64,000 nt of DNA from Ostrea edulis (GCF_947568905.1 NC_079167.1:26474001-26538000), one strand, 5' to 3'. Counted from the first letter of the stretch, positions 428 to 31,223 are shown. The notes: generated by a model from the letters alone, not told the origin. Made by a program: numbers and translations.

Positions 428-567
428 TTACTGACAAGTTCTTTGTGAACAGGATGCCTGAAAATGAAATTGATCTATAGAATATGGAAATTTGTTCGTA
501 CATGTATTAAATCACGGGTTCAATGCAGTACCTGTATAGTGTATACATGTAGTTGTTTTTTATATAT

Positions 568-629
<62 letters not shown>

Positions 630-3600
630 GTTTTCAATACTCACCACTCCGTTATTTCCAGTGCAAACACATTCGTTTCCACAATTATCAATGATTACTT
701 TGGACCCCAGTGGTATGAATACATTGGACGCTATGCATCCTGTGAAAGCAACAATAAAATTTCAAAACTTTCAACTCCTCTCTCGTTTTGTAACCAGTCT
801 TTATACAATAGTACCTATATTCATTATGAAAAAATAAACACTCAGAGATTTGACTTTCATTGAAGAAATGAACTGATTACTATGGCAAGCCTTTTTACTA
901 TTTATTCGAAAAATAAGATATATCTTTAAAGTAAAGAGATATCTCTTATTTTATAAGAGATATCTCTATAAAATGAGAGATATTTTAATTTCAAAAGATA
1001 TCTCTTTCACTTAGAGAGATATCTCTTTCACTTAGAGAGATATCCCTTTTACTTTTAGAGATATCTCTTACACTTAGAGAGATTAATTTAAAGATATATC
1101 TCTTTTGGAAAATTTAAAGAGATATCTCTCTCTAACTTAATCTGAGATATCTTTTTTTACATTGATAGAGAGATATCTCTTTACGCTAGAGAAATATCTC
1201 TTTTACTTTGAGAGATATCTCTCTAGCTTTAATAGATATCACCTTAGCGTAAAAAGATATCTCTCTAACTTACAAACAATAGAGATGTATATAGTATAAA
1301 GAGCTATCTCTATCGTGTAAAGAGATATCTCTCATTTAAAGAGATATCTTATTTTACGAATAAATAGTAAAAGGGCTTGCCATTGATTACCGATATAACT
1401 GCTTGCCCTTAATGCATTAATCTCAATTTCTTGGGGAATTGAATATTATAAGAAACTAATCCATTTGAAATGAAATACTAGGGACGTTATACTTCAGCTT
1501 TTGTTAAAACTTAAATCACTATTTTATGACGTCATTACCTGGCAGACATTGACAGATGATAGAATCTACCCAATCAGGACAAAGGAAGTTCCTGTTGTAT
1601 GTGCACTGTTCACCCGCGCGACAGTCAGTACTACAAGATAGAACAGAACTGAATACATACATGTATGTAACAATTTTAGCATGTTTACATCGAATAATAA
1701 AAAGATATTGGACGATCATTTTGGAGTTGTTCATCGTTTCACAATAATTGCGCAAATTGCTGTTCTCATACGGTAGTCCGTTTATTTCTTATGGCTGAGT
1801 TGTATCTAACCCACGTCAGCTGAAACAGTATTGACCACTCGCATTCATTTTAATAATTTTGTATAGGTATTCATGAAGAATTGCACAGTCATTAGTAAGT
1901 CAGATTCAATGAAATTTTGTCTGTATGCTGTTTTGCTTCCCATTCGAGAAATTTTCGTAAAGACGTCACCAGCTGTAAGTAATAAGTGCCACGAAATATG
2001 ACCTGTGCATGGTGCTCATGGCCGTAGCGGGTTCTTGAAAATAACGTGTGAACGCCTACCATGTCACGGGACCTCGGCATACTACCCATAGTCCTCTGCG
2101 CCTCCGCACACAGAGTGCAAACGACCTCTGGCGGAAGTTTGAGGACTTCGGGTCCGAAAAACACGTGACTTTTGCTTCTAATACATGGCACTTGGAGAAA
2201 GAACAAGACTACCTATGTTAAACAGTTGTTGAACGTCCTAGAATTGATGCTGCGCCCGGGAAGAGAATCGTACCTAGGACCTACCGCAAAGCGAGCAACT
2301 TGACCACTCGGCTACTGTCACAGGTCCAAGTCGATTATATGACATGGTGTTTCTCAAATACAATTAAACGAAGTTAGCCAGATCATAGGTGAATTTTTAC
2401 CTTGTTTTACAGGATATGGTATCATTTAATACATTAACTGGAGGTAACGTTGTTCCTTGGGCCATGATATTTACATCCCCATCTCCATTGCTTTCAGGGT
2501 TTGAGGACAAGACAACATTATCTCTCGACGTTTCAATTATTGTAACAGCATTTGGATCAGTATTTCTTGAAACAACATTGTTTCCAGCTTCAGAAAAATT
2601 TGTCGATGCCCTCGCTCTTATTCCGAAATTATTTCCAGTCGTTGTCCCTGTTTGGAATCCGGAACCCTCGGGCGATGTTCCGCCGAGTATGTTGGAAATG
2701 GAACGTTGTGAATTTTGTGACATTCCCGATGAACCGCCATCAGTCATGCTCACAAAGCCACCCATTCTGGTGTTCTGTCGGGAACCTCTAGAGAAGCCAC
2801 TACTTTCAAAATTAGTGCCTTGAACATTTTGTAAAGATCGAACTAAGTTTCCAGAATTAGATGACACAAATTGATTACTTGTTGAACTAGGATCCACAGC
2901 AGCATTGTTGTTAGGGAAACCATTAACAGATGGCGTGTTTTGAGCTTGCACGGTTCTAGACACGCCCCCTCCATTATTAGTATTGGAAGCAGAAACGAAT
3001 CTTGTCCTCGCGGATCGACTGTTTACGCCATTATTAGAGCCCAAGGCTCCTAAAAATGGGCCAGAATTTCCGACATTTCCAGGAAGGACACTTGGGGAAA
3101 ATCTACTAGTCTGAAGAGAGTTTTGAACGCCCATGATTTGTGGATCTCTAGTGAAACCAGTGGAATCCGAGGATGAAACAAATCTGTTTAAAGTTGCTTG
3201 ATCTCCGACGAATAGCCCCGCATTTCTATTAAAAGTGGAGTTAATTCCATTGATTTCAGAGTTGGCAAAAAACCTGGTATTAGAAGGATCTGCAACTCGG
3301 GTATTAATTGTTTGTGACATAGTACCCGAACCATCTTCCATGGAATTAGAAATACGTTTGACAGTTGTGGTTCTTTTGATAAATCTGCTTGTGGAATTTC
3401 CAGATGGAAGTGCATTGCTCTCAATTCCAGATCTTTGCTGATTTCTCATAGTTTGGACTGTTTTCGAATTCATACCACTAGGGATTCTACTCGGATCTGC
3501 AATGTCTATTGCACTTGGGTCTGAATTTTCAACATTTCTGCTAGGTATTTTACTGGTTAGTTGAAATCTTTGTTGGGTTCCTATATCAGACGTAATACCA

Positions 3601-5654
3601 TTGAGAGGATTGAGGGAGGCACCAATATCAACTTCCGATTGTTTGACCGGGAAATTGAGATTTATATTTACTCCCGGTCTGTTACTACCCGATGGGAAGT
3701 TAGTATTGAAATTCACTCCTGACTGGTCTCTATTGCCAATCACTGCATTGTTTTGGAAGTTCGGATCAGCAGAAAAGGCTGATCCTTGTTGGAAAGACCT
3801 GTCATTTTCACTATTGGTTCCGTCTACAAACATAATTTTGCTTCTTCTTTGAGAATCTAACTCAGGGTCCTGAATTCTATTGTTTTGTCTGGTAACGTTA
3901 GTTGTAGGTCCTGTTCTAGCATTAAATATGTCGCTCATTGAGTTAACTAGAACTGCTGCAGGGTCAAGGTTATTTCTTACAGTGGATTTTGTGTTCTGAA
4001 ATTCTGAACGTTTAAGATCAACAGATTGGGGAATGTTTACAAACTTTGTGTCGGAGTTTTGTACATCCACTTTAGAGCCCACTATGTTGCTATTGCCATT
4101 TATTACTACACTGGTCTTCTTCACAGGATCTGTCTCGCGGTTTCTTAGGCTGGCGTCAAAGTTGTTTCCATTTCGTGAAATAGTAATGGCGTCCTGATTC
4201 ATACCACCGCCAACTGGTCTAGACGAGGGAGTGTTATCAAGGACCATAATTCCCGGATCTGTTGCAAAGGAAGATGTGATTAGTCCATCCTGGGTGCCGG
4301 TCCTCGTATTTGTTCTAGAACGAATTTCTGTTTCTGTAATTGTTGTTCGAGGTCCCGCGTTTGGATCATCAATACCTTGAGTGAATATAGAATTAGAGGG
4401 CATTACCATCCTTTCATTTGATGTCGTGAATACTGTACCACGTGACTGAGGAATTCGAGACAGAATATCGCTTGGGTCGGTTTGTCCTCCGTCGGCTCGA
4501 ATAAAGTTTCTGAAGTCCATACTTAATTCATCTACTGGTGTGTTGATCTGCGAAGGGTTTCTGTCAGCGTTAATTTGATTGACTGTTGTAACGGAATTAA
4601 TATTTACTCTTCTCGTTGCGTCATTTCTTCCAGAAGGGTCAGTGCGCACTTGTCTGTTACCACTTCGAGACACGTCTCCCCCGGAAGCCGTAATGGAGCT
4701 CTGAATACCAATTCCATTTACAACTGCACTTTCTTGTACATTATTAGACAATTCGGTAGGTGTAAACATTTGTTGAAGTTCGTTCATTGTAGGAATTCCT
4801 TCTCCGGTGTTTCGGACGGAGACTGTCTGACGTTGTATAAGATTATTAGGCGTGGCATTATTGGATACACCTCTGGTAAGAAGTACTCCAGTTGGTGAGT
4901 TTTCAGTCCCTGTGCGGCTTACTCTACTAGAGCTGGGGTCTGAGTTAGAATTTCCAAAGACGGTATTCAAAATTGAACTTGCATCAAAAGTTTGCTGGCT
5001 AGTGCCAGGAACTGAATCAAACGAATTGAGTTGTCCGTTTACTGTTGTTTGTAACGATCCGCCATCATTGGAATTGCTAAAGCGGGACACAAACGAAGTC
5101 TCCACAGCAGAGGCTGGATTGACTCCATCCGGTACACCGGCATCCGAGGTTATCACCCCTGTCGCTAAGTCGTTAGTAAGTGAGGTTACGGTACCCCCTA
5201 GTAGAGCGTCTTGGCCCGTCAGAGTAGTAATTAAATTCTGGTTGTTTAAAGTGTTTGTAGACTCACCCAAGGTTAGTAATCCTCCATCGAAACCTGATTG
5301 CGACACGATACTTGATGTGGCATCAGGTAACGTTTGAACAGAATTGGAAAATCCACTAAGATCAAGAGTTGATGGTGCTGTTTCACTTGGTAGTGTAAGA
5401 CTTCCTGCTCCTCCAAAAGCAGTCAGTGGAGAAATAATAGGAAAGGGTGGTGGACCAGGGATCCCTGGAAACCCGATAGGGGGAGGCAAAAAAGTCTGTA
5501 CACCTGGCGGTGGGGGCCCAAATCCTTGAAACAAAGGCGGACGTCCGCCGAAACCAAGTAGTCCAAACGGAGTAAATCCTTGTTCTAGAGAGGATTTAAT
5601 GAACAACATCAACAGAACATAGAAGAGATTCACTCCGAGTTTTAGATACTTCAT
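428..5654 (-). CDS. Cluster gene A: secreted Ser/Asn/Gly/Thr/Arg-rich low-complexity protein (~1156 aa) with C-terminal 12-Cys module
   Basis: Exons 5654-2401 (phase 2), 1630-1539 (phase 1), 739-645 (phase 0), 457-428 (stop TAA); all GT-AG, frame continuous. Hydrophobic N-terminus MKYLKLGVNLFYVLLMLFIKSSLE. C-terminus SCKTSTDCRAGEQCTYNRNFLCPDWVDSIICQCLPGCIASNVFIPLGSKVIIDNCGNECVCTGNNGVASCSQRTCQ*. Confidence 0.9.
570..627. repeat. (CT)n microsatellite
   Basis: Direct reading. Confidence 0.95.
882..1383. mobile_element. MITE with ~49-bp terminal inverted repeats and internal AGAGATATCTCT subrepeats (intron 2 of gene A)
   Basis: Left atggcaagcctttttactatttattcgaaaaataagatatatctttaaa is the near-perfect reverse complement of the right end; flanks tgattact / tgattacc (8-bp TSD with one mismatch). 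Confidence 0.8.
1975..2325 (-). mobile_element. tRNA-derived SINE-like element (degenerate), intron 1 of gene A
   Basis: Minus strand has A-box-like TAGCCGAGTGG and degenerate B-box; body shares a short motif (ggtaggcgtt) with 6430-6660. Boundaries approximate. Confidence 0.45.
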
Positions 5655-6429
5655 GATCTCCTGGACGTACTAGTTGTGAAAGAGTCCAGGATAAAGAAGT
5701 CCTGTGGTGCTTTATGGCACAGTATTTACCTATAAGGGTGTTAAAGGATATAATGATGTACTAAACAGTCGGTGTCACTGACGATGCAACGAGTGATTTT
5801 ATGGACAGCTTTATTGCAAAGCGTGTGATGAACACAGAAGTTCTTCACATAATCTATACATGTTATTAGCATTATATATTCCGTTTGTTCATCTGACCAG
5901 CGATAAATCAATTCTTAATCATTGATCTATTAAACAATGCACTCATATACATTAAATCAAAGCGCAATGTAGAATAACACTTTTGTTCCTCACAACAAGC
6001 AAACCTCACAAGTCTTCATGCATGAAAGACTTTCTTCGTGTCAATAAATGAAAGATGTGCCTCGTTATAAATATCGTTGTACATTGATCTTTTTCTTGTT
6101 ATTACCAAAAAATGACTAATCTGTAAATTCAAAGCACTCTTGCGTCCCCATTGGTTCTGTGTCTGTCCTTATGGATGATGTCGATCATGAAATATTTAGA
6201 TTAATAATTACGGATGTCTCACTGCGTTTTTATGAATGTTAGGGCTACCATTTCTTTGTTAATTAGGTATAAATCGGTCTGTCGACCGTATGGGTGCCTG
6301 GGTCAAGGAGAAGCCAATGTCACTCGCTGCGATGGACAATGGCAGTGTTTGATGCATCCTTCATTATCATAAAACCGCTCGCTGTCACATGAATATGCAT
6401 TTGTTTAATTTTGTTTGTCAGCTCGTTAC

Positions 6430-6660
6430 TTCAGTGGTCGCGGTAGCGTAGTAGTTTGGGTGCTTGCTTCGCAACCAGGAGGTCTAGCTTCGATTCTCTT
6501 CGCCGGCGCAGTCAAAGTTAAGACGAGTGAGTCGCCTGGCATAGAAAGTATAAACCCCGAACCTGTCACGGTAGGCGTTGGCTACGAGTCATCACTGCAA
6601 CGGTTCTCAGCGCCATGCATTAGTCAAACTTAGTAGCACTTTATAAAATGCTAGTGGCGT
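6430..6660 (+). mobile_element. tRNA-derived SINE-like element (degenerate)
   Basis: GGTAGCGTAGTAG A-box-like and GCTTCGATTCT B-box-like head followed by tgtcacggtaggcgttgg core. Boundaries approximate. Confidence 0.4.
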
Positions 6661-8334: not shown

Positions 8335-8343
8335 TTATATATA

Positions 8344-8409
<66 letters not shown>

Positions 8410-8580: not shown

Positions 8581-8583
<3 letters not shown>

Positions 8584-9384: not shown

Positions 9385-11278
9385 TTATTTCTTCCCAGTT
9401 AGGTCCGGACAAGCTCTCATAGTACAGGCCGCCTGAAACAGAAGAAATCCGGAACTATTAAGACATCAGTTGTCGTTTTTCAGTCGGCCTAACGGAGCCA
9501 CGACACGTGTACCAGGCATCCTCTCATTGTTCCCAGGTCTACAGCAATCATCACTAATTTCTTTATGTTCACAATGCTCTGTTTTTATTCATAGCCCTAG
9601 TTTTAGACCTAGTTTGTGCCAAGTGGCAATTTGGATGATTCAGGAAGCGAATTAGTCATGGTATCTGTACCAAGCTTCGAAGCAATATTGTCTACAAACA
9701 TATGAAGCCTAGCGTAATGAACGGTTGTCGTCCTTTTCAATGATTCATATTCTATATGTACCTTTAACACAGTATCCCCTTTGTTTGAGAAATAAATTGT
9801 TGAAATACAAATGGTCTTACCTCTCCTGATTGGCTATTGTTACACGTGCACACATTGCCACACTGGTCAACCTGCCGAGACTGTCCGAAGGGAATGAATG
9901 TGTTCTGTGACCGACAACCTATTGAAAGACAGTCATCATGAGTCAAAATTCATCTCGTGAAACACAAGTAAATTTGGAAGACAAAAGCCTTACAATCTAG
10001 CTTATAACCTTACCTGCAACACATTGGCATCTTAGCATAGGGATCCATTTAGGGCACATGTACTGTACTTGGGAGGAACCCATTGGAGAAAAGGCACACT
10101 GCTGACCAGCCGGGCAATCCCTGAAAAGTAATGTCAGCGTGATTAAATCCGATCTTGTTGACAGAACATTTATCTGTAATAAGATAGTACATGTATTAAA
10201 CCTACGTCTGATGGCACTGGGCCTGGTTTGTCTGACCGCCAGGGACTAGAGAGGGCTGGAACTGACCAGGAAATCCCCCAGGTTGTCCAGGAAATCCCTG
10301 TTGACCAGGCATTCCAGGTTGCCCACCAGTAAATCCCGGCTGTCCAGCATTGAAACCCGGTTGTCCGAAACCCGGAGGACCACCATTAAACCCGCCTTGA
10401 CCTGCATTGAAGCCTGGTTGAGGAAATCCAGGCTGTCCATTAAATCCTGGCATGTTGGGTTGTCCATTAAAGTTTAAAGGACCATTGAATCCAGCTTGTC
10501 CGTTGAACCTTGGCTGTCCGTTAAATCCATTAAATGGTTGACCAGGCTGCCCATTAAACCCAGGTTGTCCATTAAGTCCTGGTTGTCCATTAAGTCCTGG
10601 CTGCCCATTAAACCCAAGTTGTCCATTGAGTCCAGGTTGCCCATTAAACCCAGGTTGTCCATTGAGTCCAGGTTGCCCATTAAACCCAGGTTGTCCATTG
10701 AGTCCAGGTTGCCCATTAAACCCAGGTTGTCCATTAAGTCCAGGTTGTCCATTAAACCCAAGTGGTCTATTGAAGCCTGGTTGTCCCATTAGATTGGTTT
10801 GTCCAGGAAAGCGTCCCTGTGGCCCAGCACCAAACTGAGGCGAAAATCCTTGGTTAAGGGGGCCAGGAATGCCCTGATTGGGTGGAAAGCCATTAACTCC
10901 GCCCTGCCTCCCAATGGAAAGTCCTGTCTGCCCTTGACCCAGGGATGTGGTTTGGGATGGAATACCAGTATTTTGCACGGATGCTGTGCTGCCTATTGTC
11001 GAAAATCCTGGTTGCATTGATCCAGTTCTAGTTCCAACAGACGATCCAGACTGAATAGATCCGGTCGGTAATCCAGCTGTATTGGTTGTAGAAGTTGACA
11101 GTCCCGTATTTACTGGCTGTAATCCCGAATTCAGTCCGGAATCCGTGTTCTGAGTTTGACTGCTACCGAAATTTTGGGTAGGAAACGAAAATAAGTCCAA
11201 ACCAGTGCCAGTGTTGCCCTGGCCCAGTGCCACACCAACTAAACACAGCAAAATCCATCCAATACTAATCTTCATCAT
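9385..11278 (-). CDS. Cluster gene B: secreted Gly/Gln/Pro/Asn/Phe repeat protein (~441 aa) with C-terminal 12-Cys module
   Basis: Exons 11278-10206, 10120-10014, 9918-9821, 9432-9385; phases 2,1,0. Signal peptide MMKISIGWILLCLVGVALG. 12 tandem NGQPG[LF]-type hexapeptides. Module CHQTDCPAGQQCAFSPMGSSQVQYMCPKWIPMLRCQCVAGCRSQNTFIPFGQSRQVDQCGNVCTCNNSQSGEAACTMRACPDLTGKK*. AATAAA overlaps the stop. Confidence 0.92.
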
Positions 11279-14069: not shown

Positions 14070-17000
14070 ATGTGTGCTTTAAGGATTCTTTTTATGACTG
14101 TGATGTTATTCTGTTTTTGTGACGGGACTTATTTCTTTAAACCTAAGAAAATATTTTTGCCTCCGATTCATCATATGCCTCACATGCATCATCATCCGCA
14201 CCCTCATCACCACCACCACCATCATCACCATCATCATGGAATGAAGGACCACGGACACATTCACAAATTTCACAAGACAAAGATTCTGAGACCGATCATT
14301 CACCACAAAATTCGCCCTCTTCCAAAACCAGTGATGTACAAGACTTTTCTGATTAGAAAATACAGTTTGCCGCCAAATTTTCATGTGCACATTCCGTTGA
14401 ATAAGAAAATCTATGCACACACCCATGGACCACCTGGACCGCATACCCATTATCCAGAAAAACCCATGTTTATGATGCAAAAACGAAAGATGAAGAAGCT
14501 TTATAGACCAAAACAAGTGTTTCCTCCTCGTGGATATCAACAACCTCCAGCAAAGAATATTTTGAGACATAGAAATATACGAAAATATCCACAAATACCG
14601 GATCCATCCATGCAAATGCAGACAAATATGTTTCTACCTACAGGAATTCTACCACCGCCAAAATCTAGGCCCCCCAAAACCCCTGGAATTAACAAGTATG
14701 ACCTGTGGCTTACGAAAATTAATGAGTGGATGATAAAAAATCAGAATACTGCTAAAGGACTCCCAGTGAAGAGAAAAAGAAAACGGATTATCAACAAGAT
14801 ACACATGAATGTCCCAACTCCTGTTCAAAAATTGAACATTAAGAAACCCGAACCGAAAAAAAAGAACGACGGAATCATCGCTAACTTTGTGGTAGTCAAG
14901 CCACCGTTTATCAGCAAGAGTGAGGAGACTGCCGTTCCAGGAATCCCCGTATTTGAAAATCCCAAACCCTCTATAAAAGACAATATTCTGGATATTCCAA
15001 AATTAGATATGAAACTGCGTCCCACAGCGCCAGTGATGGGTATTCCTATCAGTCTGGATGATATAGGACCCCCGTTTGATATTAACGTTGCCAATAACCA
15101 GAACCGGGGTGACCTTCCACCACCCATTGAAATTGTTGACGACCCAGGTCCTAGTAGAACCGGTGATGGTGATAGAATTGGCATTGGGATTCCTGTAAAT
15201 TTGAGTCCGGGACCATTTGAGTCGGATTCCGTTACACCTCCCAACATCATAGTGGACAGGTTACCTACAGAACAGAACGTCAACAGTATTGTTCCGCTTC
15301 CCGGGAAAATCAACGATATGCTGACAAATGTAGGTGACTTGTCTCACTTTCCAAATTTAGATTTGAGTAATGAACCATTAATAATTGAACCCTTTATGCA
15401 AATACCACCGCTCAGTCAGAGTCCGATGCCGTTTGACATACAGCCATTCCCTTGGGATGTATCGCAAATACCTTTCCCACCGGAAATAATTCCACGTACT
15501 TCAAATAAGGAAAAGGAACCGTACGTTATGAAACCATTGGAACCGATTGTAAAGATGATTGGCCGGGACAGCGTGAAACGTAAAAACGACACAGTATTTG
15601 TTCCTAAACCAATATTAGACCCAGAATATAATGATACTGAGATTGCAAAAGAAGCACCGTATAACATATTTACAGAGGGCCCAGCTGATGTATCCACAAA
15701 TGAACATCAAACATCAATGCCGCCAATTCCACTGCAGACTATTAAACATGACCCCAGTGCATCATCAATTTCTACAACAGCGCAACCATCAACTAAATAC
15801 CAAACGACGTTTACTCTACCACCATTGTCTTTAATGGAGTTCAAACATTCAACTTCTTCTCCGGATGTAACAACACAGACAACAACTATGCGAAACAAAG
15901 AAACGACACCAGCAATTATGACAACAACTCCATTACCAACAATCATACCGGTACCAGATCCCAGTATCCTTGTAAATGGATCAACGGGAGAAGGTCAACA
16001 TAATGTGGACATGGTTGACCAAATAATAGATAAAGAACAACAGAATGACACAGCGTTCTTTAAATATCGACCGGAAGAATCGTTCCCCTACTTATCATTT
16101 CATGGTCTAAAGACATCAACAGCAGCTTCAAAAATCTCGGATACTCGCAAAGAGACAACAACGGCTTGGGCGGTAACTACCGCTTCTCAGCCGACAACAA
16201 AACTATTCAAAGAAACACCAGGTGTGCAAATATTTACGACAACACTTCCCGCACCTGTGACAAACGATCAGGTAAATGAGGAAATAATTTTAGATTTTAT
16301 GACTGATAAACAAATTAGATCATCAAGATCCGATGTTGTGCTTGATTATTCAACCTCTGATAAAGACCAAACAACAACGCCGAAAACACAAGAACGTACA
16401 TCGTTAAAGAGGAGCGACTCTACTTCCACGCAGCCGACAACTGCGGAAGCAACAACATCGACCACTACATTACCCACCACAACACAACTCCTGACAATCC
16501 CAAGTTCAACCACAAAAACCACATTAAAAAATCATACCACTCCGAAATTAGATGATGTTAGTATGGACTCATCAACAACACAGTCAGTATCGACAACAAA
16601 GTCTACCACACTTGACCAAACAACAGAACGTATCTCATCCACAACAAGTGACTACTATTCAGAAACACCAACATACGACTATGTTACAGACCTTTATGAC
16701 TGGCCTTTCAACTGGACAGAAAATTCAACCTTTGTATATTTCGATGACGTCCTGAACATAACACAACAAACAACAGAAATACGTGTTGAAAATACAACAA
16801 CGCCAACAGTCAACATGACTTCAACACCAACACCATCAACTTCAATATTGGTTTCTTCCGAGTTTTCCTCAAGTCACAACCCCACCACAACTATGATGGA
16901 TTTTAGAGGCACAAAACAGACGACAACACTCCCGTCACCTCAGACAGCGGATCTTGATCAGACAACAACCAATACCTCTACCGAACCTACATCTACAATT

Positions 17001-18466
17001 GAAAAGCACTGGCAAACATCACTCTCGCAAACTAACACAACGACCCCGATAGCTACTGGACGCTCAACAACAATGTCAAACAACCAAAACATTTCAGTCA
17101 CTACATCAACTCCGAGATCATCAACAACCGAAGGAACAAAGATATGCCAACAAATGTAAATGTTTCACTAATTATGCTAAAACAATTTATATTTAATTAA
17201 TTATAGGTTTTGTTTTGTTCCATAATAACATTATATATACAGTGTAATAAAATATGCATTTTACTTTTTGCAGATACTGCCAAATCGGTCATGAATGTAC
17301 AGAGAATAATACATGGCTTTGCCCAGATGACGCGCCCGGGACTGACTGCCAGTGCACGCAGGGGTGCCGAGAAGGGCAAATGTTCATACCACTTGGAGAA
17401 TCATTCTATGTAGACGAGTGTGGCAGTGTCTGTTCTTGCTTTAACCTTTACGGAAAGGTATTTTTGCCGCAAAATATTTTTATCAATGCATCGATATAAA
17501 TGTCTCTCCATGATTATTCACAGAAATCACGATTCCAAGTTTTATATTATTACAATGTTTTTTTGTTAGGCTGAGTGCCAAAAGATGCAATGTCCAAACA
17601 GCACCGTAGCAGATCCGGAAAAGAACCGACGAAACTATACTGGGATTTCCATCGGCGGCGTGATCTACATTCCTGTACAACGTGTCAAAATTCCAAAGAA
17701 AACCAAATCGAAAATTCCCGGTGACGATGGCTATACGTATGGTATTTCGATTGGTGGTGTCATCTATATACCGAAAAGAAACCACACGAACGCTCAACTT
17801 GATAAAAACACCAATTGGACGTCCGGAATATCGCTGGGTGGCGTCATTTATGTTCCTTCTCGAGAACACACAAATGAACAAAATGTCAATTCTGACTATG
17901 AGAATGTGGTTGACGGGAATTCTAGTTGGACAAAAGGAATAACTATTGGAGGTATAATCTATGTACCAGTGCATAAAAGAAAGAAAACTTTTCAAGAAAA
18001 GAATAAAGAGTTTGAAAAGATATATGACAAGACAGAATTTGCTGATGCGGATGTCATATCTGTTGAAACGCCTTACGGTTCAACACGGGGCATCACTATC
18101 GGAGGTGTTATTTACATACCAAACAAAAAGAGAAATGAGCCTGTCCATTTCCTTGGTGGAAACGAATTGCAATCAAACAATAAAAATCAGACTTCGCCAA
18201 TACAAGTGGAATACCCACTCGGATGGACAGATGGCATTTCAATCGGTGGGATCATTTATGTGCCCGTCCAACAACGCCGGAAGGTCCAAAACGAACCAGT
18301 TTATTTGATACCCAACATCAAAACAGAACCCGACAACAAAAATAACATTCCGTATTTGACTAAAACCGCTGGGATACATATTGGAGGCATCATCAACGTT
18401 CCCATTGCTAAACGATCATCAATTAAATCTATCAAAATAAAAAAGATGAACCCAGCTTTTGGATAA
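14070..18466 (+). CDS. Cluster gene C: secreted His/Lys/Pro/Thr block protein (~1388 aa) with internal 12-Cys module and C-terminal GISIGGVIYIP repeats
   Basis: Exons 14070-17155 (phase 2), 17274-17457 (phase 0), 17570-18466. Signal peptide MCALRILFMTVMLFCFCDG. Module CQQIYCQIGHECTENNTWLCPDDAPGTDCQCTQGCREGQMFIPLGESFYVDECGSVCSCFNLYGKAECQKMQC. TATAAAA at 13877, AATAAA at 18616. Confidence 0.9.
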
Positions 18467-23151: not shown

Positions 23152-24625
23152 ATGCATTTCTTTGCTTTATTTATCGTCCTTCTACAAATTGCAAATACAG
23201 CCACAGTCCATATAGGTCACCCTGTTAGACTTAGAAATTATGTAACGATGAGAAGGCCACGATTTCCAATGAGATTTTTCCCACTAATCGGCAGATTTTT
23301 CAGAAACAGAAGAGTGAGACCAACCAGCAGACCGCCGACACACTTCCATGTTCCATTAAATGGAAGACAGTTCGAACACTTTCATGCCTTTGGAGACGTA
23401 GATCATACCCACGACACAACATTTCCATCTGTAGTCAACTCGGAAAACGGAGCCGGGTGGGATATTCCGGTTCAATGGAGAGATACTAATACCTGGTCTT
23501 TGTTCGACAAGGTCAACCCGGATTCTGTTCTCGTATGGAACAATGATCTTCCCGACAACAAACCTGATGCCATTCCAGACTCTTCGTTACCAAATCGGCC
23601 ATTATTTCCTGATAGTGTTCTTCCATCCGATGTTGAGGTTCCGGTCATTACTTCAGAATTTCTACCTACGTCAAACAAGCGGAAGGAACCTGCGGTTACA
23701 AGACCACTACCTCCAGTCTCAACGGAAAACGATGGGGTTTTATTACCAGGAATCATTGTAAATGTAACTGATAGCAACTCTACTGACTTAAACAGAACTC
23801 AGAAAAATACGGGAAATGACACAAACACGTCTGGAATAAACAGCAATTTTGTTCCAGTTTCCATGACGACACCTGAAACTCCAAAGGCGGTGAATAAAAA
23901 GACAAAAGAACCATCTTGTCACAAAACGTAAGTTTAGCTTTAAAGATATGTTATCGTTGCTTTAAATAGAAATTTCTGTATTTATATATCTCAGTTTTAA
24001 GTAAGTACAGTGTAGTATTTATATATCTCAGTTTTAAGTGAGTACAGTGTAGTTGACATTTAAGCATGGCTTTCTATTTTTAAGGGGGTGTTTGACTGGT
24101 CACGAGTGTGTCTACTCCGGATCTTACATCTGTCCTATTTATATACCGGAAGTGGACTGTAAATGTAGAGCAGGTTGCAGAGTGGACTATACGTTTATAC
24201 CTTTTGGGACAACTGTTACCATGGATACCTGTGGAAATTCATGCTCTTGTTTCAATATGTTCGGAGCAGTAAGTATAACTTTGTTTCCTTCAAAGAAAAT
24301 ATTTCAAAACTGTAACAACTATTTTTGATTGAGACTACTAGTCACTATAATCAATCTTAATGAATACGTGTATCATTAACAATATTCATTTATTTTCTAG
24401 CCGACATGTTCAAACAAACCTTGCGTAGATGACCCTCAAAAACAAGTACCAGGCAAAATTCTCATACCGGAAGTAGTCAGCGCCTCCACACGGCAAAGTC
24501 CGTTACCAACACAGGTCTCTTTCGACATCACCACGACAGATCAGCTGGAAATTAATCAACCAAAAGACAACATACAAATGAACTTCCCGGTGATTCCAAT
24601 CGTCAAAGATAACCAGAAGAGTTAA
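23152..24625 (+). CDS. Cluster gene D: secreted Arg/His/Pro/Asp-rich protein (~394 aa) with 12-Cys module and short C-terminal tail
   Basis: Exons 23152-23927 (phase 2), 24085-24268 (phase 0), 24401-24625. Signal peptide MHFFALFIVLLQIANT. Module CHKTGCLTGHECVYSGSYICPIYIPEVDCKCRAGCRVDYTFIPFGTTVTMDTCGNSCSCFNMFGAPTCSNKPC. TATAAAAA at 23055, AATAAA at 24735. Confidence 0.9.
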
Positions 24626-25589
24626 ACTGGCACTTTACTTCTAAGACACCATTTTCCAGCCGCGTACAATACTTCAAGAAATCCCACATGTACTTATATG
24701 TTTATGTGTTTTATAATGCTATGAAATCCATTGGAATAAAATAAACATTATTATGAATTACTCTTAGATCTTGTATATTCTTTCAAGTTAATCAAAAGGC
24801 GTTTATCTAATAAATGAATTCATGTTTGATTTGTAATTCAATTGTGACGGTGGTTAAATAACAGTGACTTTTTATCTCGTAATTACGACTTTTGATCACG
24901 TTATTACGACTTTCTTAAATCATAAAATTACGGGTTTTTTTTTTAAATCTCGTTATTGCGATTTTCTTAAATCATAAAATTATGGGTTTTTTAAAATCTC
25001 GTTATTGCGATTTTCTTTCCTAAGTTGTAATAACGGGGACCAGACTAAGTTGCAAGTAGCCTAAAATATATTGATTTGTTTTACATGATGAAATCATTGA
25101 TAACGCTTATACACTTGTAATGTTTTAAATACCACGCTGGACATTCGGATCGAATCGGATACTAAGAACCGGGTCAAAGATTTAAAACGCCGTTTTGGGA
25201 TCTATTCACTCAGGTGGTCATATTCAAGACCTGGTTGATGTATTTTCCCTCAATGATTTTCCTTTTCTGTGAATGCGAATGACCTCGCATTTATTAGAGA
25301 TGAATGTCATTTACCAATTTCTTTTCTTTGTATTACATTGAATGTGGGCTAATTATACACACAATCTTTCTATCACGTTTGCAATACCGATAAATGAAAT
25401 TCCCAAACATCACTTGCAGAAAATAAAAGTTTTTAAAAACTATAAATTCTAAGTAATTCAAATTACTGTAATAGACATTTTGTAATTAATTAAACATTTC
25501 TTACGACCTCTACTTGCATAGTAGATGATAGATATGGCGCTAGCACCCTAATCTTTTTAAAAAGATAAGGTTGTAACGATCTAGTTTGC

Positions 25590-25795
25590 CAATACAACCT
25601 ATCATTGGGTCAAATGCTGTCTGACGTGTTTCGTACCGATTGTTAGGTCGTTCTTGGCACACTGATTTTGACTACGGATAACTCCGTTTACCTGATCAAG
25701 ATGTGGGGCTTACGGCGGGTGTGACCGGTCGCCAGGGAATGGGTACTCCCCCTGGGTATGAGATTGATCACTGTTCGTTATCTTCACCTTTCATT
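25590..25795 (+). mobile_element. Penelope-like retroelement 3' end fragment
   Basis: Ends in gagattgatcactgttcgttatcttcacctttcat; related tails occur at ~19000 and ~21605. Confidence 0.6.
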
Positions 25796-26719
25796 AATAT
25801 GAAAGGGATGTATACTCGACAAAATGTTCTCTTTAATTCAACAAGGCGGGATGTTTTTTCGTGGTGAAATCATGTCCAAATACTAGTTTAACACTAATGT
25901 CCTATCAGCTAGAAGAAAGATCACCCATCACCACCGAAAAAAAATGCTCAAGGTATGTCTATGATAACTTCTAAGGTATGATAAAAATTATTCTTGGACA
26001 ATTCATGGTAATCATCTGTTTGTAATGTCTTAATGAAATCAGTTTTGAATGATGCGATTTGTTTTCAAAGCGGTGTGATTAACATAGCTTTTATTCAATC
26101 GTTTGGTTGATTAAATGATAAGATATTGTCCAATAGCATTCATTTTGAGCATAAGATTGGCATCTTGTCGACATCTTTTCACCGACTTACAACAAATATC
26201 ATTTCAATGACTTCATTTTTGACGATAAGCTACAAGTCATCATGTTGACTTTACTACAACCAAGACGAGAAAATTATGTTGTTCAGTTCATAATGATGGA
26301 TATTAGCAACATATCAACTTATTGATATCGACATGTCCATGTTTAGTGAACAAGGCTCTTGAACGTAACCGTACAAAGAGGACAATGCGTCTCGCCTTGT
26401 TGATTTTAAGGGAACATATTGCAGAGTAAATTAATGTTGTGAACATTAATACTTTCCCCCCCAGTTAATTTTGACGTTCCAATCAGTCAATTTATCAATA
26501 TTACGAGTTCCTTCACTTTCTGATTGTCGTTGTACAGTTATTCTTCCAAAATGAAAATGCGTCGTGTTTTGAAAATATTTTGTATTTAACAATAATAATT
26601 AAAAAATATATTATGTATAAAGCAACGATTCGACACATAATTCGCGATTTATCGTGATATAAATCAAAAAGTAGATGGACAATATACGTTTCTTTAGTAT
26701 ATGTACATGTATTGTGGCA

Positions 26720-26723
<4 letters not shown>

Positions 26724-26768
<45 letters not shown>
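26724..26768. repeat. (CT)n microsatellite
   Basis: Direct reading. Confidence 0.95.
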
Positions 26769-26771
<3 letters not shown>

Positions 26772-27730
26772 CATACTGATCATCACGGGGGACATTGAAC
26801 ACCTTGTTTTCTTGCTTCTTGCTTACAAAAAGACTATATGATGTAGTACATAGTCTTAAAAAGTAATTAAACTATTTGTACCGACGTTGGTCATTGAATT
26901 CTTTCCCTTGTCAAATTACATAACGTCGATATGCGCAGGTAAAAAAAATTCCAATGAAGCAAGCAAGAGAGATAACTGCTTTGACTGTTAAAATGGATTT
27001 ATGCTTAGAGTAGGACTTAGTGGGCATCCTTGAAGAACGCCTTAATAGAATTGATTTTACAGCAATGGTCGAAAATTGCAATATGACGTCTAAAGTATTC
27101 ATGATATAAAATATTTTCATTTGATAAAATAAGCTCTGATAGATGTTGTATTTACCCATGGAAATCATATCAGATATATTCAATTAGTAAAATAAAATCT
27201 GTCAAAAAGGAAAACCCATTGCATATTAAACTACAGCAAATTGGGGGTTTTTTATATAGAGAAATTGGCTATCAGTTGGTAAACTTATTAAGATTTCTAA
27301 CAGCAAGATTATCACTCTTTCGATATTACCGATTATGAATGACAAATGTCGCCATTTCGTCTGATATCTTAACCAGTTTTGACAGGTCTTACGAAAGCCG
27401 TTATAAGTCGCGGCTGTATATGTCGTAGTAAGCGTATTTTCCGTAAACGTGGGTTGTATGATGTATGTCTTGTACCCACACCTCTTTCTCCCAGGGATCG
27501 TGGTTGTAATTCGATAAATATACCCACCAATATATGGACATGTTTACCTAGTCATAAATAAACACCAATACACACATGTTCATTTCGTCACGATTGTAAT
27601 TACTCAGTGGATATTTGTAAACATTGTGGGTTTTTCAAATCTACGTACATTGGATAAAATATTCCACGAAATAATTAGGAAAACAGGATTTACGATTGTT
27701 GAGATATCAGTGCGCATTAAAAACATCAAG

Positions 27731-28564
27731 ATGATTTATTTTTTTACATTGCTGTGTTGTTTGTCATGTTTTATCCATGTCGCTTCGTTTATCTTTATTC
27801 CATGGCCTATAATAATTTTCGATGATGCCGGAAACGATGCTTCTGGGAACGTTTACACTCCATTCTTGGAAAATCAACCACGTGCCCCTGAAAACAATAG
27901 GATGAGGAGACCCCAGCCTCCCGTCACCAACATGAGACCTCTCCTGCCAAGGAATCCTCAAAACAGATTGTATCCCTCCAGACAACAAGTCGCGACTCCT
28001 CAAAACACCATCAAGTATATCACTCCGTACGTCAGGTAATGGCAATTTCTAGAATAGGAATAGTAAACCTTCAATAATGAAAAGTTGAATAAACAACATT
28101 CGATTTTGTTTAGTTCGCCTTACTGTCCCGCAGGACAACAATATGTTTACATGCCTCCGACACTAGATGGCGATGCAGTAGCATCCATTTGTCCTCTCAA
28201 CAACCCCATCCATCCGCTCTGTAGATGTCAAACAGGTGTGTTTGTTTACAAAGACTTATTCAATATTTACTACTGCGATAGGATTTTTTTACGATCCATA
28301 AACATTCTACACGGGTTCTATATAACAATCTGTCTTTTCCTTGTAGGTTGTCGACATAAAAACTTCTTTATCCCGTATGGAACGTCAGTTATGGTTGATA
28401 AATGTGGAAACAAGTGCTATTGTAATAGTTTAAATGGCGAGGTAGGCTTTCAATGGACCCCAATGTTGATAACAAACCAATTAGGAAACAAATGGATTAT
28501 ATATATTTCGGTTGACTGTCCTTTTTATGTCTTGCAGGTGGAATGCGAATTTGACAGTTGTTAA
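27731..28564 (+). CDS. Cluster gene E: small secreted Pro/Arg/Asn/Gln-rich protein (~182 aa) with a 10-Cys variant of the module
   Basis: Exons 27731-28035, 28114-28235, 28347-28441, 28538-28564; phases 2,1,0. Signal peptide MIYFFTLLCCLSCFIHVAS. Module YVSSPYCPAGQQYVYMPPTLDGDAVASICPLNNPIHPLCRCQTGCRHKNFFIPYGTSVMVDKCGNKCYCNSLNGEVECEFDSC*. AATAAA at 28690. Confidence 0.88.
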
Positions 28565-29050
28565 ACGAGGCTCTACATATATTTTCGTAAGCACCAAGAA
28601 GTTGTTAATTTCAAATCTATCTGGTTTGATCTGTATCTTTCATAAAGACTTACATGTACAATCGCTAATGTATTCCAAAGATTTTTATAAATAAAAATAT
28701 ATTTACAATGAGCACATCCGTTATTTTTCATTGTCTACAAAATGCAATGGCGACATCGGGATTTTAGAGAGGTCGGGAAGAGTGCCAAAGGCATGATTTG
28801 AGCACCGATAGCACAGACCCTTCGGAAAGGAGGGTCTAGAGGTTTGTTCTATCAGAAAAATTAATTTAAATTGAAGTACGTGAAATAGTCAAGTCTGGGT
28901 TTGAAAGATATCCTAAAATCAAATCCGAAAGGGCTACGTTATTGTAGCTATAGATAATGTCTCAGACGAGAATATCTTTGAATAGTTAAGAAATAAATTA
29001 CATGAGGACATGAATTGCAACGCTTTACGCCAGTATACTTCATGAAACCC

Positions 29051-29053
<3 letters not shown>

Positions 29054-29092
<39 letters not shown>
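29054..29092. repeat. (TA)n microsatellite
   Basis: Direct reading. Confidence 0.95.
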
Positions 29093-29095
<3 letters not shown>

Positions 29096-30139
29096 TACTT
29101 TTACTAAAATAGTCAGACTGTATTTGTCAAGATTCGCACGCACATTGTTCACATTCATGAGGAAAAGGCCATCATTTCAATTGGTACAGATACCAAAGGT
29201 GAAAAATTGGAAATGTATACGTAAAGAGGGTAAAACTCTTTTCTTGATATGTGTATGGTTTAAAAGAGGGGGGAATCCAGTTGGGAAAAGTTACAAAAGC
29301 GTCATGGTAAAAGACAACAGAAGGAGAAATGTTATTTACAGTAAGAACACCTGATCTAGACCTGCAAAAGCTGTACGTTAATGACATCAGTGTTTGTGTA
29401 CATAAAGCCTTATGACGGTATACGCATCTGAACTTCGCAATTCACTAGAAAGTAGAAGATGAATTAAACTTGAGTCGAGCTTTTTCTTCACCATACTGTA
29501 GAACTTGTTCTATTCTTATTTATGGACATCCTTATATATTTCATATAATTTGATATTCATTTTACACGAGTAGTCAATATTTTCTAGCAAATCAAAATTT
29601 AACATTTGAAACTTTTCAACATTATGTAAAATGATTCCGTTGAAAATTATGATACTACGTATAACGCAAGGAATGGCAGACGATTGAAGACAGAAAATAT
29701 GCTGAGTTGATGTAAATTTCCAGTCATCTGGTCGCCCTTGTATATGTGGTCAAAGGGCCAAACCTAAATAAAAACACGTTATAAACAGTTGAAGCATTTC
29801 TTTGGGTAAAACTATCCCTCTAGGCTGTGGAAAAACATCAATGTATTGCAGCACATTCCTCGGACCGCCTGTCACCGAACAAGCCCCTGTATCCACCTTC
29901 TACATTGGATGGTCATAAATGAAAAGCCAATCATGCAAGACCTCTCTATCTGTAATGATAAGCATGCATGGCGTTACGTTGCTTGTCAGAATCTGATTGA
30001 TGGGCATGATTTAGAAATCTGAACACGAGCTGACGTCTTTTAGCTCTCATACCCACACTAGAAGCGTCACAAGTCTGTTATAAATTCTAAAAACCATCTA
30101 CAACAACACATTGTGTGATATATCCAAAGACCAAGGACA

Positions 30140-31223
30140 ATGAAGATCCAAATAACTGTATTTGTATTGTGTTTATTATCTATAACAAATGCTTATTCTT
30201 ACAAAAGGAGAAAAAACTGTGTGAAACGACGTTTGCCATATCCTCCAACGTACCACTATTATAGACCGCAGTTTCCTCCACTTCGTCCAATGCCACAGCC
30301 ACAGTGGCCGATATGGAACGTACCTGCTCCAACCCCTGTGGATATGAGGTTTTATGAGGTTGTAGGGCAACCGATAAGAGGCGACATAGGACAGACACTT
30401 CCTGTGTTTCCGCAACCACAGCCTCCCATAGACACTAAACCAATCGTCCCGGATAATTCCGGACCTGTCATTGTAAATCCAGTAAAACCAGTAATTGAAG
30501 ATTCCGGACCCCTCCGAGGAGACATAGCACCTACCCGTGACACCATGCCACCTGCTGGGATCGGTAAACCTTGCAATGCTTTGTGAGTATACATGTAGAT
30601 CAGTCAATTTGGTTATGTCCCATACTCGTATACAAAGTATCTAATATCTTTCCATCGTTTTTTAAAGATTACAGGAATATTAATTTTACTTATTAGTGAC
30701 TATTTTTTTCTTTGACAGGAGTAATAACTGTGCTATGGGGGAAGTCTGCATGTACGTTGACCAGTCTGTGGGAAATAGCTTCGTATGTCCATCTGCTGCT
30801 GCAGTTTCATGTACTTGTCAACCAGGTAAATATATATATTTTAAGAATTAGTCACTACACTGTCCACATCCTCTGCTAACACTTGCCAAATTCCCCATAG
30901 ATCTATTCTGAGCACTCTGTATTCCTAAGACCTCACACCTCTTTAAAACCTTAATCAAAACGCACACTAATACACAAGTCCATAATGTACTTTCTGTGGT
31001 GTTACACAGGGTGTCGGCATGGGGACCTTTTTATTTCACTTGGTAACACGGTGACGGTGGACCAGTGTGGCAGCAAGTGTTCTTGCATGTCTTTATACGG
31101 AGCAGTAAGTGTCCACCTATCAATTATTGTTGCAGTTTCAGTTTAGATGTGTACCACTCCTAACCCTCAAATCAAAATTCTTTGTTTCACTTTCAGGTCA
31201 GTTGTGAGAAAAAAAATTGCTAG
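30140..31223 (+). CDS. Cluster gene F: secreted Lys/Arg/Tyr/Pro-rich protein (~223 aa) with two RGD motifs and C-terminal 12-Cys module
   Basis: Exons 30140-30582, 30719-30825, 31010-31104, 31197-31223; phases 2,1,0. Signal peptide MKIQITVFVLCLLSITNA. Module CNALSNNCAMGEVCMYVDQSVGNSFVCPSAAAVSCTCQPGCRHGDLFISLGNTVTVDQCGSKCSCMSLYGAVSCEKKNC*. TATAAA at 30079, AATAAA at 31313. Confidence 0.92.

What the first reader, a model, noticed from the sequence alone, without database searches (positions are those of the whole stretch)
428..31223. Six-gene tandem cluster: swappable low-complexity exon fused to a conserved 12-Cys module
Seen in sequence: six spliced genes share one plan. It is signal peptide plus one hypervariable exon (~100 to ~1085 codons, mostly unalignable between copies), then a phase-2 intron just after Cys1, then small exons encoding C-x(4-6)-C-x2-G-x2-C-x(7-15)-C-P-x(6-8)-C-x-C-x2-G-C-x5-F-I-[PS]-[LFY]-G-x5-D-x-C-G-[NS]-x-C-x-C-x(8-9)-C-x4-C. 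The ORF track misses the module because it is split over exons under 200 bp. Established: variable repetitive cores on a conserved Cys-rich assembly domain are the design of spidroins, gel-forming mucins and byssal collagens. Inference: this is a co-regulated kit of secreted building blocks for one biomaterial (shell organic matrix, periostracum, ligament, cement or mucus), co-assembled through the common module. I recognise no named family.
Basis: partly seen in the sequence, partly recalled or inferred. Interest (0 to 1): 0.92.

Follow-up and report, generated by a model that had tools for sequence, protein, structure and literature searches.

The report
Bivalve secreted-protein cluster sharing Cys module
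Six neighbouring oyster genes each encode a secreted protein made of a very different, probably floppy, low-complexity region plus the same small disulfide-rich end-piece; the family occurs across bivalves, always labelled "uncharacterized", and its job (most likely building an extracellular matrix) is still untested.

Summary
The window is Ostrea edulis. It carries exactly six spliced genes, each with a signal peptide, one long Cys-free low-complexity exon (101 to 1084 codons), and a roughly 75-residue Cys module. The module is split by GT-AG introns at conserved positions and phases (2, 1, 0).

A spliced Magallana RNA contig and RefSeq models confirm the junctions. The module has no Pfam family. 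It gives only sub-threshold TILa, VWC2L_C and pacifastin hits. AlphaFold models it confidently (pLDDT 90). Residues 37-78, the C7-C12 half, superpose on VWC, E-module and FnI units; the whole module matches only family members.

An exhaustive HMM search of 1.84 billion proteins found 30 hits. Every named one is a bivalve (oysters, pearl oysters, mussels, scallops, a unionid, clams), and all are uncharacterized. Gene order and a flanking gene are conserved in Magallana, and the flank also in Mytilus.

The "co-assembling biomaterial kit" reading is plausible (mucin-like, collagen-like, His-rich, Pro-rich and RGD regions) but untested. "Swappable exon" is not supported. I found no expression, proteomic or literature evidence. 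Verdict: a real, ancient, undescribed bivalve family built on a divergent VWC/TIL-E-like domain, of moderate interest.

The parts
2401..5654 (-). Gene 1, exon 1: signal peptide plus a 1057-residue Cys-free S/N/T/G-rich region, ending at C1
   Evidence: 99% identical to P0001 and to the O. edulis protein XP_056017309.1.
1539..1630 (-). Gene 1, exon 2: module C2-C6
   Evidence: The junctions are used in the RefSeq model P0010.
645..739 (-). Gene 1, exon 3: module C7-C10 (FIPLG...DNCGNECVC)
428..457 (-). Gene 1, exon 4: C11-x4-C12 and stop
   Evidence: The equivalent exon is present in M. gigas XP_011445898.3. It is skipped in the O. edulis and S. echinata RefSeq models, which run on into the next gene.
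10206..11278 (-). Gene 2, exon 1: signal peptide plus G/Q/P/N-rich region with 25 uninterrupted Gly-X-Y triplets, ending at C1
   Evidence: (Pfam Collagen 44.4 bits, cut-off 27.2)
10014..10120 (-). Gene 2, exon 2: module C2-C6
9821..9918 (-). Gene 2, exon 3: module C7-C10
9385..9432 (-). Gene 2, exon 4: C11-x4-C12, short tail and stop
14070..17155 (+). Gene 3, exon 1: signal peptide, poly-His/His-Pro block, then Pro-rich and Thr-rich mucin-like region, ending at C1
17274..17457 (+). Gene 3, exon 2: module C2-C10 in one exon (intron 2 absent)
17570..18466 (+). Gene 3, exon 3: C11-x4-C12, then a 290-residue tail with seven GI[ST][IL]GG[VI]I[YN][IV]P repeats
   Evidence: 77% identical to the C. 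angulata tail with all motif copies kept. The AF2 model is uninformative.
23152..23927 (+). Gene 4, exon 1: signal peptide, Arg/Pro-rich stretch and His-rich motif, Pro/Asn/Thr-rich region, ending at C1
   Evidence: The His-rich motif is also present in Saccostrea and Pinctada relatives.
24085..24268 (+). Gene 4, exon 2: module C2-C10 in one exon
24401..24625 (+). Gene 4, exon 3: C11-x4-C12 plus a 66-residue tail
27731..28035 (+). Gene 5, exon 1: signal peptide plus Pro/Asn/Arg-rich region; no C1
28114..28235 (+). Gene 5, exon 2: module C2, (C3 replaced by Tyr), C4-C6, with a long C3-C4 loop
   Evidence: The same losses occur in the Magallana orthologues.
28347..28441 (+). Gene 5, exon 3: module C7-C10
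28538..28564 (+). Gene 5, exon 4: C11-x4-C12 and stop
   Evidence: The orthologous exon is in the spliced RNA contig L002.
30140..30582 (+). Gene 6, exon 1: signal peptide, one extra mature Cys (KNCVKRR), Pro-rich region with two RGD motifs (one of them GPLRGD), ending at C1
30719..30825 (+). Gene 6, exon 2: module C2-C6
31010..31104 (+). Gene 6, exon 3: module C7-C10
31197..31223 (+). Gene 6, exon 4: C11-x4-C12 and stop

Best explanation
This is an ancient, bivalve-restricted tandem family of secreted modular extracellular proteins.

Each member joins two parts. The first is a long, Cys-free, probably disordered region of distinctive chemistry: Ser/Thr/Asn-rich and mucin-like in genes 1 and 3, Gly-X-Y collagen-like in gene 2, His-rich in genes 3 and 4, and Pro-rich with RGD in gene 6. 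The second is a compact C-terminal two-lobed disulfide module: an N-lobe (C1-C6) and a C-lobe (C7-C12) that is VWC-SD1 / E-module / FnI-like.

Most likely the module is a common protein-binding or anchoring handle. It would dock the different disordered regions to one shared partner, or to each other, in an extracellular matrix or secretion made next to cells. The conserved RGD motifs point to integrin contact.

Shown: gene structures, splicing, module conservation, predicted fold class, taxonomic range, synteny.
Inferred: secretion (hydrophobic N-termini read by eye), disorder, the C1-C3 disulfide (both are lost together in gene 5), the binding-handle role, and the matrix function. Which material is involved is unknown.
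For: - Six copies with conserved intron positions and phases.
- Splicing confirmed by an RNA contig and RefSeq models.
- The module is more conserved than the variable exon between Ostrea and Magallana for genes 2, 3, 5 and 6: 77-89% against 47-71% identity. For genes 1 and 4 the two values are similar (about 53-56% against 49-53%). The module is 90-96% identical among scallop genera.
- The variable regions contain no Cys. Cys outside the module lie in the hydrophobic N-terminal leaders, apart from one in gene 6.
- Compositions are those of structural or glycosylated extracellular proteins. Pfam Collagen scores above its cut-off on gene 2, with 25 GXY triplets in O. edulis and 43 in M. gigas.
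- GPLRGD is conserved between oyster gene 6 orthologues and the tail of a Mytilus member, and GPTRGD occurs in another Mytilus member.
- The AF2 model of the module has pLDDT 89.8. Residues 37-78, the C7-C12 half, superpose on the VWC2L C-terminal domain at 1.8 A over 44 residues, and on FnI, pacifastin and E modules. The best whole-module PDB neighbours are the TIL-E parts of MUC2 and the VWF D' region.
- The family is confined to bivalves among named hits. The cluster and a flanking gene are syntenic in Magallana, and the flank also in Mytilus, where a family member lies next to a CH-domain gene.
Against: - No expression, localisation or proteomic evidence was obtainable. Eight literature searches and two supplement searches by accession found nothing.
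- No Swiss-Prot shell-matrix entry matched the fold.
- Mature proteins 1-5 have an even Cys count, so covalent polymerisation through the module is not indicated.
- No shared upstream sequence motif was found.
- Whole-module structural matches outside the family are all non-significant (E above 0.05, Z at most 3.8), so the 'TIL-E-like' label for the N-lobe is weak.
- VWC-type domains are also used by soluble regulators.
Confidence: 0.5

Rival explanations
1. The proteins are soluble mucus or gel glycoproteins of the pallial organs or gut, not components of a solid biomaterial. The Cys module would act only as a stable folded cap or lectin-like binder.
For: Genes 1 and 3 are Ser/Thr-rich and mucin-like. 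NCBI auto-names the orthologues 'mucin-5AC-like' and 'mucin-17-like'. The nearest PDB folds are mucin and VWF TIL-E units.
Against: The members lack VWD, C8 and CTCK domains. Genes 2, 4, 5 and 6 are not mucin-like in composition. The RGD and collagen-like features suggest a matrix in contact with cells.
Confidence: 0.17
2. The proteins are extracellular regulators of signalling ligands (BMP/TGF-beta or similar), using the VWC-like lobe as chordin, CV2, brorin and VWC2L do. The disordered regions would tether them to matrix.
For: The C-lobe superposes on the VWC2L C-terminal domain (probability 0.99, 36% identity). Sub-threshold VWC2L_C and TILa hits appear. Language-model neighbours are VWC, VWC2L and brorin clusters, but at score 0.77, which makes them a lead only.
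Against: The module has only the SD1-like half of a VWC, and no Pfam VWC hit. Known BMP antagonists lack kilobase-scale low-complexity regions and are not bivalve-restricted six-gene arrays.
Confidence: 0.12
3. The proteins are immune effectors or protease inhibitors, in the manner of pacifastin, TIL or arthropod single-VWC proteins.
For: Sub-threshold Pacifastin_I hits. Pacifastin structures align to the C-lobe at 2.2-3.8 A.
Against: All scores lie below the Pfam cut-offs. The most conserved non-Cys residues (FIPxG, DxCGN) follow the VWC-type structural consensus (my own reading of it, not tested here), not a variable reactive loop. Strong orthologue conservation and stable synteny are unlike fast-evolving immune arrays. 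The long variable regions would be left unexplained.
Confidence: 0.07

Closest known systems
E module / TILa (PF12714) and the TIL-E units of VWF D' and gel-forming mucin D assemblies
   Same: A small all-beta unit with three disulfides follows another small disulfide-rich lobe. The best PDB Foldseek neighbours of the whole module are MUC2 and VWF D'D3, including the TIL'E' NMR structure 2mhp. TILa is the recurrent Pfam near-hit.
   Different: All matches fall below significance (TILa 10-17 bits against a cut-off of 27; Foldseek E of 0.2 or more). The N-lobe has 3 disulfides, not the 5 of TIL. There is no VWD or C8 context. The unit sits at the C-terminus of a low-complexity protein.
VWC domain (PF00093) and VWC2L C-terminal domain (PF23331); arthropod single-VWC proteins
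   Same: The C7-C12 pattern parallels VWC subdomain 1. Superposition on the VWC2L C-terminal domain gives 1.8 A rmsd over 44 residues at 36% identity. UniProt auto-names three members 'VWFC domain-containing'.
   Different: No Pfam VWC hit. The spacing is C-x3-C-x-C, not C-x2-C-x-C. There is no SD2 with a CC-x2-C motif. The extra N-lobe is not part of VWC.
Pacifastin inhibitor domain (PF05375) and the fibronectin type I finger
   Same: A similar three-stranded, disulfide-stapled mini-fold aligns to the C-lobe.
   Different: These are sequence-unrelated or sub-threshold. The resemblance is a shared mini-fold only.
Modular biomaterial proteins (spidroins, byssal preCOLs, gel-forming mucins, mollusc shell-matrix proteins with repetitive low-complexity domains)
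   Same: The design principle is the same: a variable repetitive or disordered core plus a conserved folded terminal domain, tandem paralogues, and His-rich and collagen-like segments.
   Different: There is no sequence or fold relationship to their terminal domains, and no evidence here of assembly, material or tissue. This is an analogy only.

Membership tests
VWC (PF00093) | Pfam VWC model hit at or above the gathering score | tested here: not met
   No VWC hit at E up to 10 on the window exons, or up to 1 on ten family members.
VWC (PF00093) | Ten Cys with C-x2-C-x-C in subdomain 1 and CC-x2-C in subdomain 2 (consensus from my own knowledge) | tested here: not met
   The module has C-G-N-x-C-x-C (three residues between the first two Cys) and no CC pair anywhere. 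Only an SD1-like half is present.
VWC (PROSITE VWFC profile) | Match to the PROSITE VWFC profile | not testable with these tools
   UniProt auto-names A0A6J8BNC4, A0A6J8BQE7 and K1R506 'VWFC domain-containing protein', which suggests a profile match. I could not run it.
TILa / E module (PF12714) | Pfam TILa hit at or above the gathering score (27 bits) | tested here: inconclusive
   Recurrent hits of 10-17 bits (E 0.0075-0.9) on gene 3 and three relatives, always on the C7-C12 region. Structure searches agree with an E/VWC-SD1-like lobe.
TIL (PF01826) | Ten-Cys TIL pattern and a Pfam hit | tested here: not met
   No TIL hit. The N-lobe has only six Cys.
Pacifastin_I (PF05375) | Pfam hit at or above 27.9 bits | tested here: not met
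   14-16 bits only.
Gel-forming mucin / VWF | VWD-C8-TIL assemblies and a C-terminal cystine knot | tested here: not met
   None of these Pfam domains was found in any member. The variable regions contain no Cys.
IGFBP-N / perlustrin-like 12-Cys domain | Pfam IGFBP hit; GCGCC-x2-C motif (from my own knowledge) | tested here: not met
   No IGFBP hit and no such motif in the alignment.
Collagen triple-helix repeat (gene 2 only) | Uninterrupted Gly-X-Y triplets; Pfam Collagen at or above the cut-off | tested here: met
   44.4 bits against a cut-off of 27.2. There are 25 triplets in O. edulis and 43 in M. gigas, but not in scallop or mussel relatives. Triple-helix formation itself is not testable here.

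The most novel reading that the evidence does not exclude
The locus is a bivalve-specific matrix toolkit that has kept its place beside the same flanking gene since before mussels and oysters diverged. Its members would co-assemble, through a previously undescribed two-lobed TIL-E-like docking domain, into one bivalve-specific extracellular structure (hinge ligament, byssus or larval cement, periostracum, or the cell-shell attachment layer). Each paralogue would contribute a distinct chemistry: hydrated mucin-like, collagen-like, metal-binding His-rich, or integrin-binding RGD.
Probability: 0.25. Interest if true: 0.75.

Novelty: new variant of a known kind. Interest (0 to 1): 0.5.

Why it matters
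If the shared module is a docking handle, this would be a compact, evolutionarily stable parts list for a bivalve extracellular material. It would also add a new small disulfide-rich domain family (about 75 residues, confidently modelled) to the VWC/TIL-E superfamily.

It gives biomineralisation and bioadhesion researchers six co-located, clearly orthologous candidates in farmed species (Ostrea, Magallana, Mytilus, Pecten, Pinctada). All are currently annotated 'uncharacterized'.

It also flags annotation errors. The O. edulis and S. echinata RefSeq models skip the tiny terminal exon and fuse gene 1 to its neighbour.

Tried and rejected
- **Pfam on window exons and ten relatives.** Only sub-threshold TILa, VWC2L_C, Pacifastin_I and EGF1_RECK hits.
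- **PDB sequence search with two profiles.** Nothing, or chance RNase hits at E of about 0.5.
- **First exon-wise alignment (A1).** It mis-aligned the two C-x-C motifs, so I dropped it.
- **Word-indexed searches.** The module-region query returned only close scallop orthologues, and the family profile added one clam. No protein carried a functional name.
- **Literature.** Eight full-text searches by accession, LOC number, UniProt id, SRA run and descriptive terms, plus supplement searches in two oyster shell-proteome papers. No mention of any family member. The one VWC passage found concerns a different six-VWC protein.
- **Tissue of expression from Logan contigs.** Only one spliced RNA contig was found, and I had no way to look up the run's tissue metadata. 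Other contigs were genomic exon-1 ORFs.
- **Shared upstream k-mers among the six genes.** None.
- **AF2 of the gene 3 repeat tail.** pLDDT 28, uninformative.
- **Module tree.** Mostly unresolved. Only the gene 2 / Mizuhopecten and gene 4 / Ylistrum / Mytilus groupings had moderate support.
- **Perlustrin/IGFBP-N, macin-type antimicrobial peptides, canonical EGF.** I considered and rejected these on Cys pattern and the lack of hits.
- **Disulfide connectivity.** I could not read it from the model because no coordinates were available.
- **Full spliced O. edulis proteins.** I did not submit them to remote tools, because they have no single reference. Database orthologues were used in their place.
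Full report
**1. What is in the sequence**

A regex for the core of the module (F-I-[PS]-x-G-x5-D-x-C-G-x-x-C-x-C) hits six times in the six-frame translation. Two hits are on the minus strand (663-719, 9842-9898). Four are on the plus strand (17383-17439, 24194-24250, 28367-28423, 31030-31086). One hundred shuffles of the window gave none. An HMM built from the six modules found no further or degenerate copy anywhere in the 64 kb.

I read the DNA at each junction and built complete models:

| Gene | Strand | Exons | Length (aa) |
|---|---|---|---|
| 1 | - | 2401-5654, 1539-1630, 645-739, 428-457 | 1156 |
| 2 | - | 10206-11278, 10014-10120, 9821-9918, 9385-9432 | 441 |
| 3 | + | 14070-17155, 17274-17457, 17570-18466 | 1388 |
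| 4 | + | 23152-23927, 24085-24268, 24401-24625 | 394 |
| 5 | + | 27731-28035, 28114-28235, 28347-28441, 28538-28564 | 182 |
| 6 | + | 30140-30582, 30719-30825, 31010-31104, 31197-31223 | 223 |

All 16 introns are GT-AG.
- Intron 1 is phase 2, two to three codons after C1.
- Intron 2 is phase 1, inside the Gly codon preceding C7. It is missing in genes 3 and 4.
- Intron 3 is phase 0, before C11.

Gene 5 has Ser at C1 and Tyr at C3. Its Magallana orthologues show the same two losses. This is therefore a conserved 10-Cys variant, and I infer that C1 and C3 pair with each other.

Each protein starts with a hydrophobic leader (read by eye; no predictor was available). Cys outside the module lie in these leaders, apart from one mature Cys in gene 6 (KNCVKRR). 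That Cys is conserved in Saccostrea.

**2. The variable exons**

The variable exons do not align with one another, apart from weak gene 3 / gene 4 similarity (E 0.005 and 0.019). Their compositions differ sharply:
- Gene 1 is S/N/T/G-rich.
- Gene 2 is G/Q/P/N-rich.
- Gene 3 is T/P/S-rich, with an N-terminal poly-His block.
- Genes 4 to 6 are Pro-rich.

Gene 2 scores above the Pfam Collagen cut-off (44.4 against 27.2 bits). It has 25 uninterrupted Gly-X-Y triplets, and the M. gigas orthologue has 43. Scallop and mussel relatives have none.

Gene 6 carries two RGD motifs. The context GPLRGD is conserved in the Saccostrea orthologues. It also occurs in the C-terminal tail of a Mytilus member, and GPTRGD occurs in another Mytilus member.

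Gene 3 ends in a 290-residue tail with seven GISIGGVIYIP-type repeats. The tail is 77% identical in C. angulata, with every repeat kept. AlphaFold could not model it (pLDDT 28).

**3. Where the window comes from, and independent support for the models**

Exon 1 of gene 1 is 99% identical to a Logan protein whose 90% cluster contains Ostrea edulis XP_056017309.1. The window is therefore O. edulis.

That RefSeq model uses my exon 1-2-3 junctions. It then skips the 30-nt last exon and continues into the next gene. The Saccostrea echinata model does the same. The M. gigas orthologue XP_011445898.3 ends with the complete module.

For the gene 5 orthologue, a 1034-nt RNA-derived contig (SRR24489168) encodes the whole 182-residue protein. 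It aligns to the C. angulata chromosome in four blocks, separated at the predicted intron sites.

**4. Family range and synteny**

I ran a profile of four module sequences against 1.84 billion representative proteins, read exhaustively by HMMER. It gave only 30 hits at E up to 0.001. A few of the weakest are low-complexity noise.

Every hit with a source name is a bivalve: Ostrea, Saccostrea, Magallana, Pinctada, five Mytilus species, Argopecten, Mizuhopecten, Ylistrum, Pecten, Sinanodonta (a unionid), Mactra and Mercenaria. All are labelled 'uncharacterized' or 'hypothetical'. UniProt rules name a few 'VWFC domain-containing' or 'EGF-like domain-containing'.

Synteny:
- In C. angulata the order is gene 3, 4, 5, 6, followed by a large gene on the opposite strand with a faint CH-domain hit, matching the gene order in the window.
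- In M. gigas, gene 2 and gene 1 are followed by a 497-residue gene and an astacin gene.
- In Mytilus galloprovincialis, a family member lies next to a CH-domain gene, the domain faintly hit in the C. angulata flank.
- Consecutive accession numbers in Mytilus and Argopecten also indicate clustering.

Between Ostrea and Magallana, the variable exons are 47-58% identical (71% for gene 6). The modules of genes 2, 3, 5 and 6 are 77-89% identical. For genes 1 and 4 the module is no better conserved than the variable exon. Among scallop genera one module is 90-96% identical.

A module tree is poorly resolved. It groups gene 2 with a Mizuhopecten protein, and gene 4 with Ylistrum and Mytilus proteins. 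Composition and motifs show matching variable-region types in other orders: G/Q-rich, GF-rich N-terminus, His motif. The paralogues are therefore old, diverged duplicates. I see no evidence that exons were swapped.

**5. What the module is**

- **Pfam.** Only sub-threshold hits, and always on the C7-C12 half: TILa 10-17 bits, VWC2L_C 13-18 bits, Pacifastin_I 14-16 bits, EGF1_RECK 17 bits.
- **PDB sequence search.** Nothing.
- **Structure prediction.** AlphaFold2 on an 18-sequence alignment, with the M. gigas gene 1 orthologue as target, gives pLDDT 89.8 and pTM 0.73, mostly short beta strands.
- **Foldseek against PDB.** No match better than E 0.2. The top rows are the TIL-E parts of MUC2 and VWF D'D3 (including 2mhp, TIL'E'), then FnI pairs, pacifastins and the collagen IIA VWC.
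- **Swiss-Prot models.** Residues 37-78 superpose on the VWC2L C-terminal domain at 1.8 A with 36% identity. Whole-module neighbours (RECK, Jagged, kielin, NELL) are non-significant.
- **AFDB clusters.** The only significant hits are family members K1R506, A0A6J8BQE7 and K1QNY2.
- **VIA-align over 48,161 chains.** Z is at most 3.8 (NELL2 VWC, FnI).
- **ESM Atlas.** The shape search and the language-model search point to the same VWC/TIL/TILa neighbourhood at TM of about 0.5 or less and score 0.77.

My reading is a two-lobed unit. The C-lobe belongs to the VWC-SD1 / E-module / FnI mini-fold class. The N-lobe (three inferred disulfides) has no convincing named counterpart. The arrangement resembles a reduced TIL-E pair. 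It fails the membership tests for VWC, TIL, pacifastin, IGFBP-N and gel-forming mucins.

**6. Function**

Nothing I could reach gives tissue, stage or proteomic evidence. Eight literature searches and two supplement searches were blank. No shared upstream motif was found.

From anatomy alone, the most likely role is extracellular matrix or secretion proteins whose differing disordered regions are presented on a common binding handle (confidence about 0.5).

The even Cys count argues against covalent polymerisation through the module. Gene 6, with its one extra Cys, is the exception.

The alternatives are soluble mucus glycoproteins, VWC-type ligand regulators, and inhibitor or immune proteins. 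They are listed with their tests under the rival explanations.

**7. Verdict**

The genes already exist as uncharacterized database entries. The family, its domain, its conserved cluster and its bivalve restriction appear undescribed in the literature I could search. I rate it a new variant of a known kind (the VWC/TIL-E superfamily on low-complexity secreted proteins), with interest 0.5.

Noticed in passing
window 428-739 and beyond the left edge: The O. edulis RefSeq model XP_056017309.1 and the S. echinata model XP_061195266.1 both skip the 30-nt terminal exon of gene 1. They splice on into a downstream gene, which is a separate 497-residue gene in M. gigas. This is either a read-through isoform or a shared annotation artefact.
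   Followed up: partly
window 17570-18466: The tail of gene 3 has seven GI[ST][IL]GG[VI]I[YN][IV]P repeats about 35-45 residues apart. It is 77% identical in C. angulata with all repeats kept. It has no Pfam family, and the AF2 model is uninformative (pLDDT 28).
   Followed up: partly
window 10206-11278: Gene 2 has 25 uninterrupted Gly-X-Y triplets of the form (GFNGQP/GLNGQP)n, and the M. gigas orthologue has 43. Scallop and mussel relatives are G/Q-rich but have no triplet register. This looks like an oyster-specific collagen-like segment.
   Followed up: partly
window 14070-14300 and 23300-23420: Genes 3 and 4 have His-rich N-terminal blocks: a run of His and His-Pro in gene 3, and an FEHFHAFGDVDHTHD-type motif in gene 4. 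The gene 4 motif is shared with Saccostrea and Pinctada relatives. Metal binding is possible.
   Followed up: no
window 30140-30582: Gene 6 has two RGD motifs. The GPLRGD context is conserved in Saccostrea and also in Mytilus family members. Gene 6 also has one extra mature Cys near the N-terminus, conserved in Saccostrea.
   Followed up: partly
window 553-640: A (GA)n/(TC)n microsatellite lies in the last intron of gene 1. It produces the spurious SLSLSL / ERERER ORFs in the ORF list.
   Followed up: no
window 35842-40110, minus strand: Two long ORFs (491 and 896 residues; Ser/Arg/Glu-rich, coiled-coil-like, no Pfam hit) probably belong to the large neighbouring gene. A CH-domain gene flanks the family in Mytilus, and the C. 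angulata flank gives a faint CH hit; I did not align the window ORFs to either. This gene is not part of the family.
   Followed up: partly
P0038 (Pinctada imbricata KAK3091606.1): This pearl-oyster model looks like a fusion of a gene 4-like N-terminal part, which ends in a C1-like CHKT, with a gene 6-like Pro-rich part and a module. It is probably a merged annotation of two cluster members.
   Followed up: no
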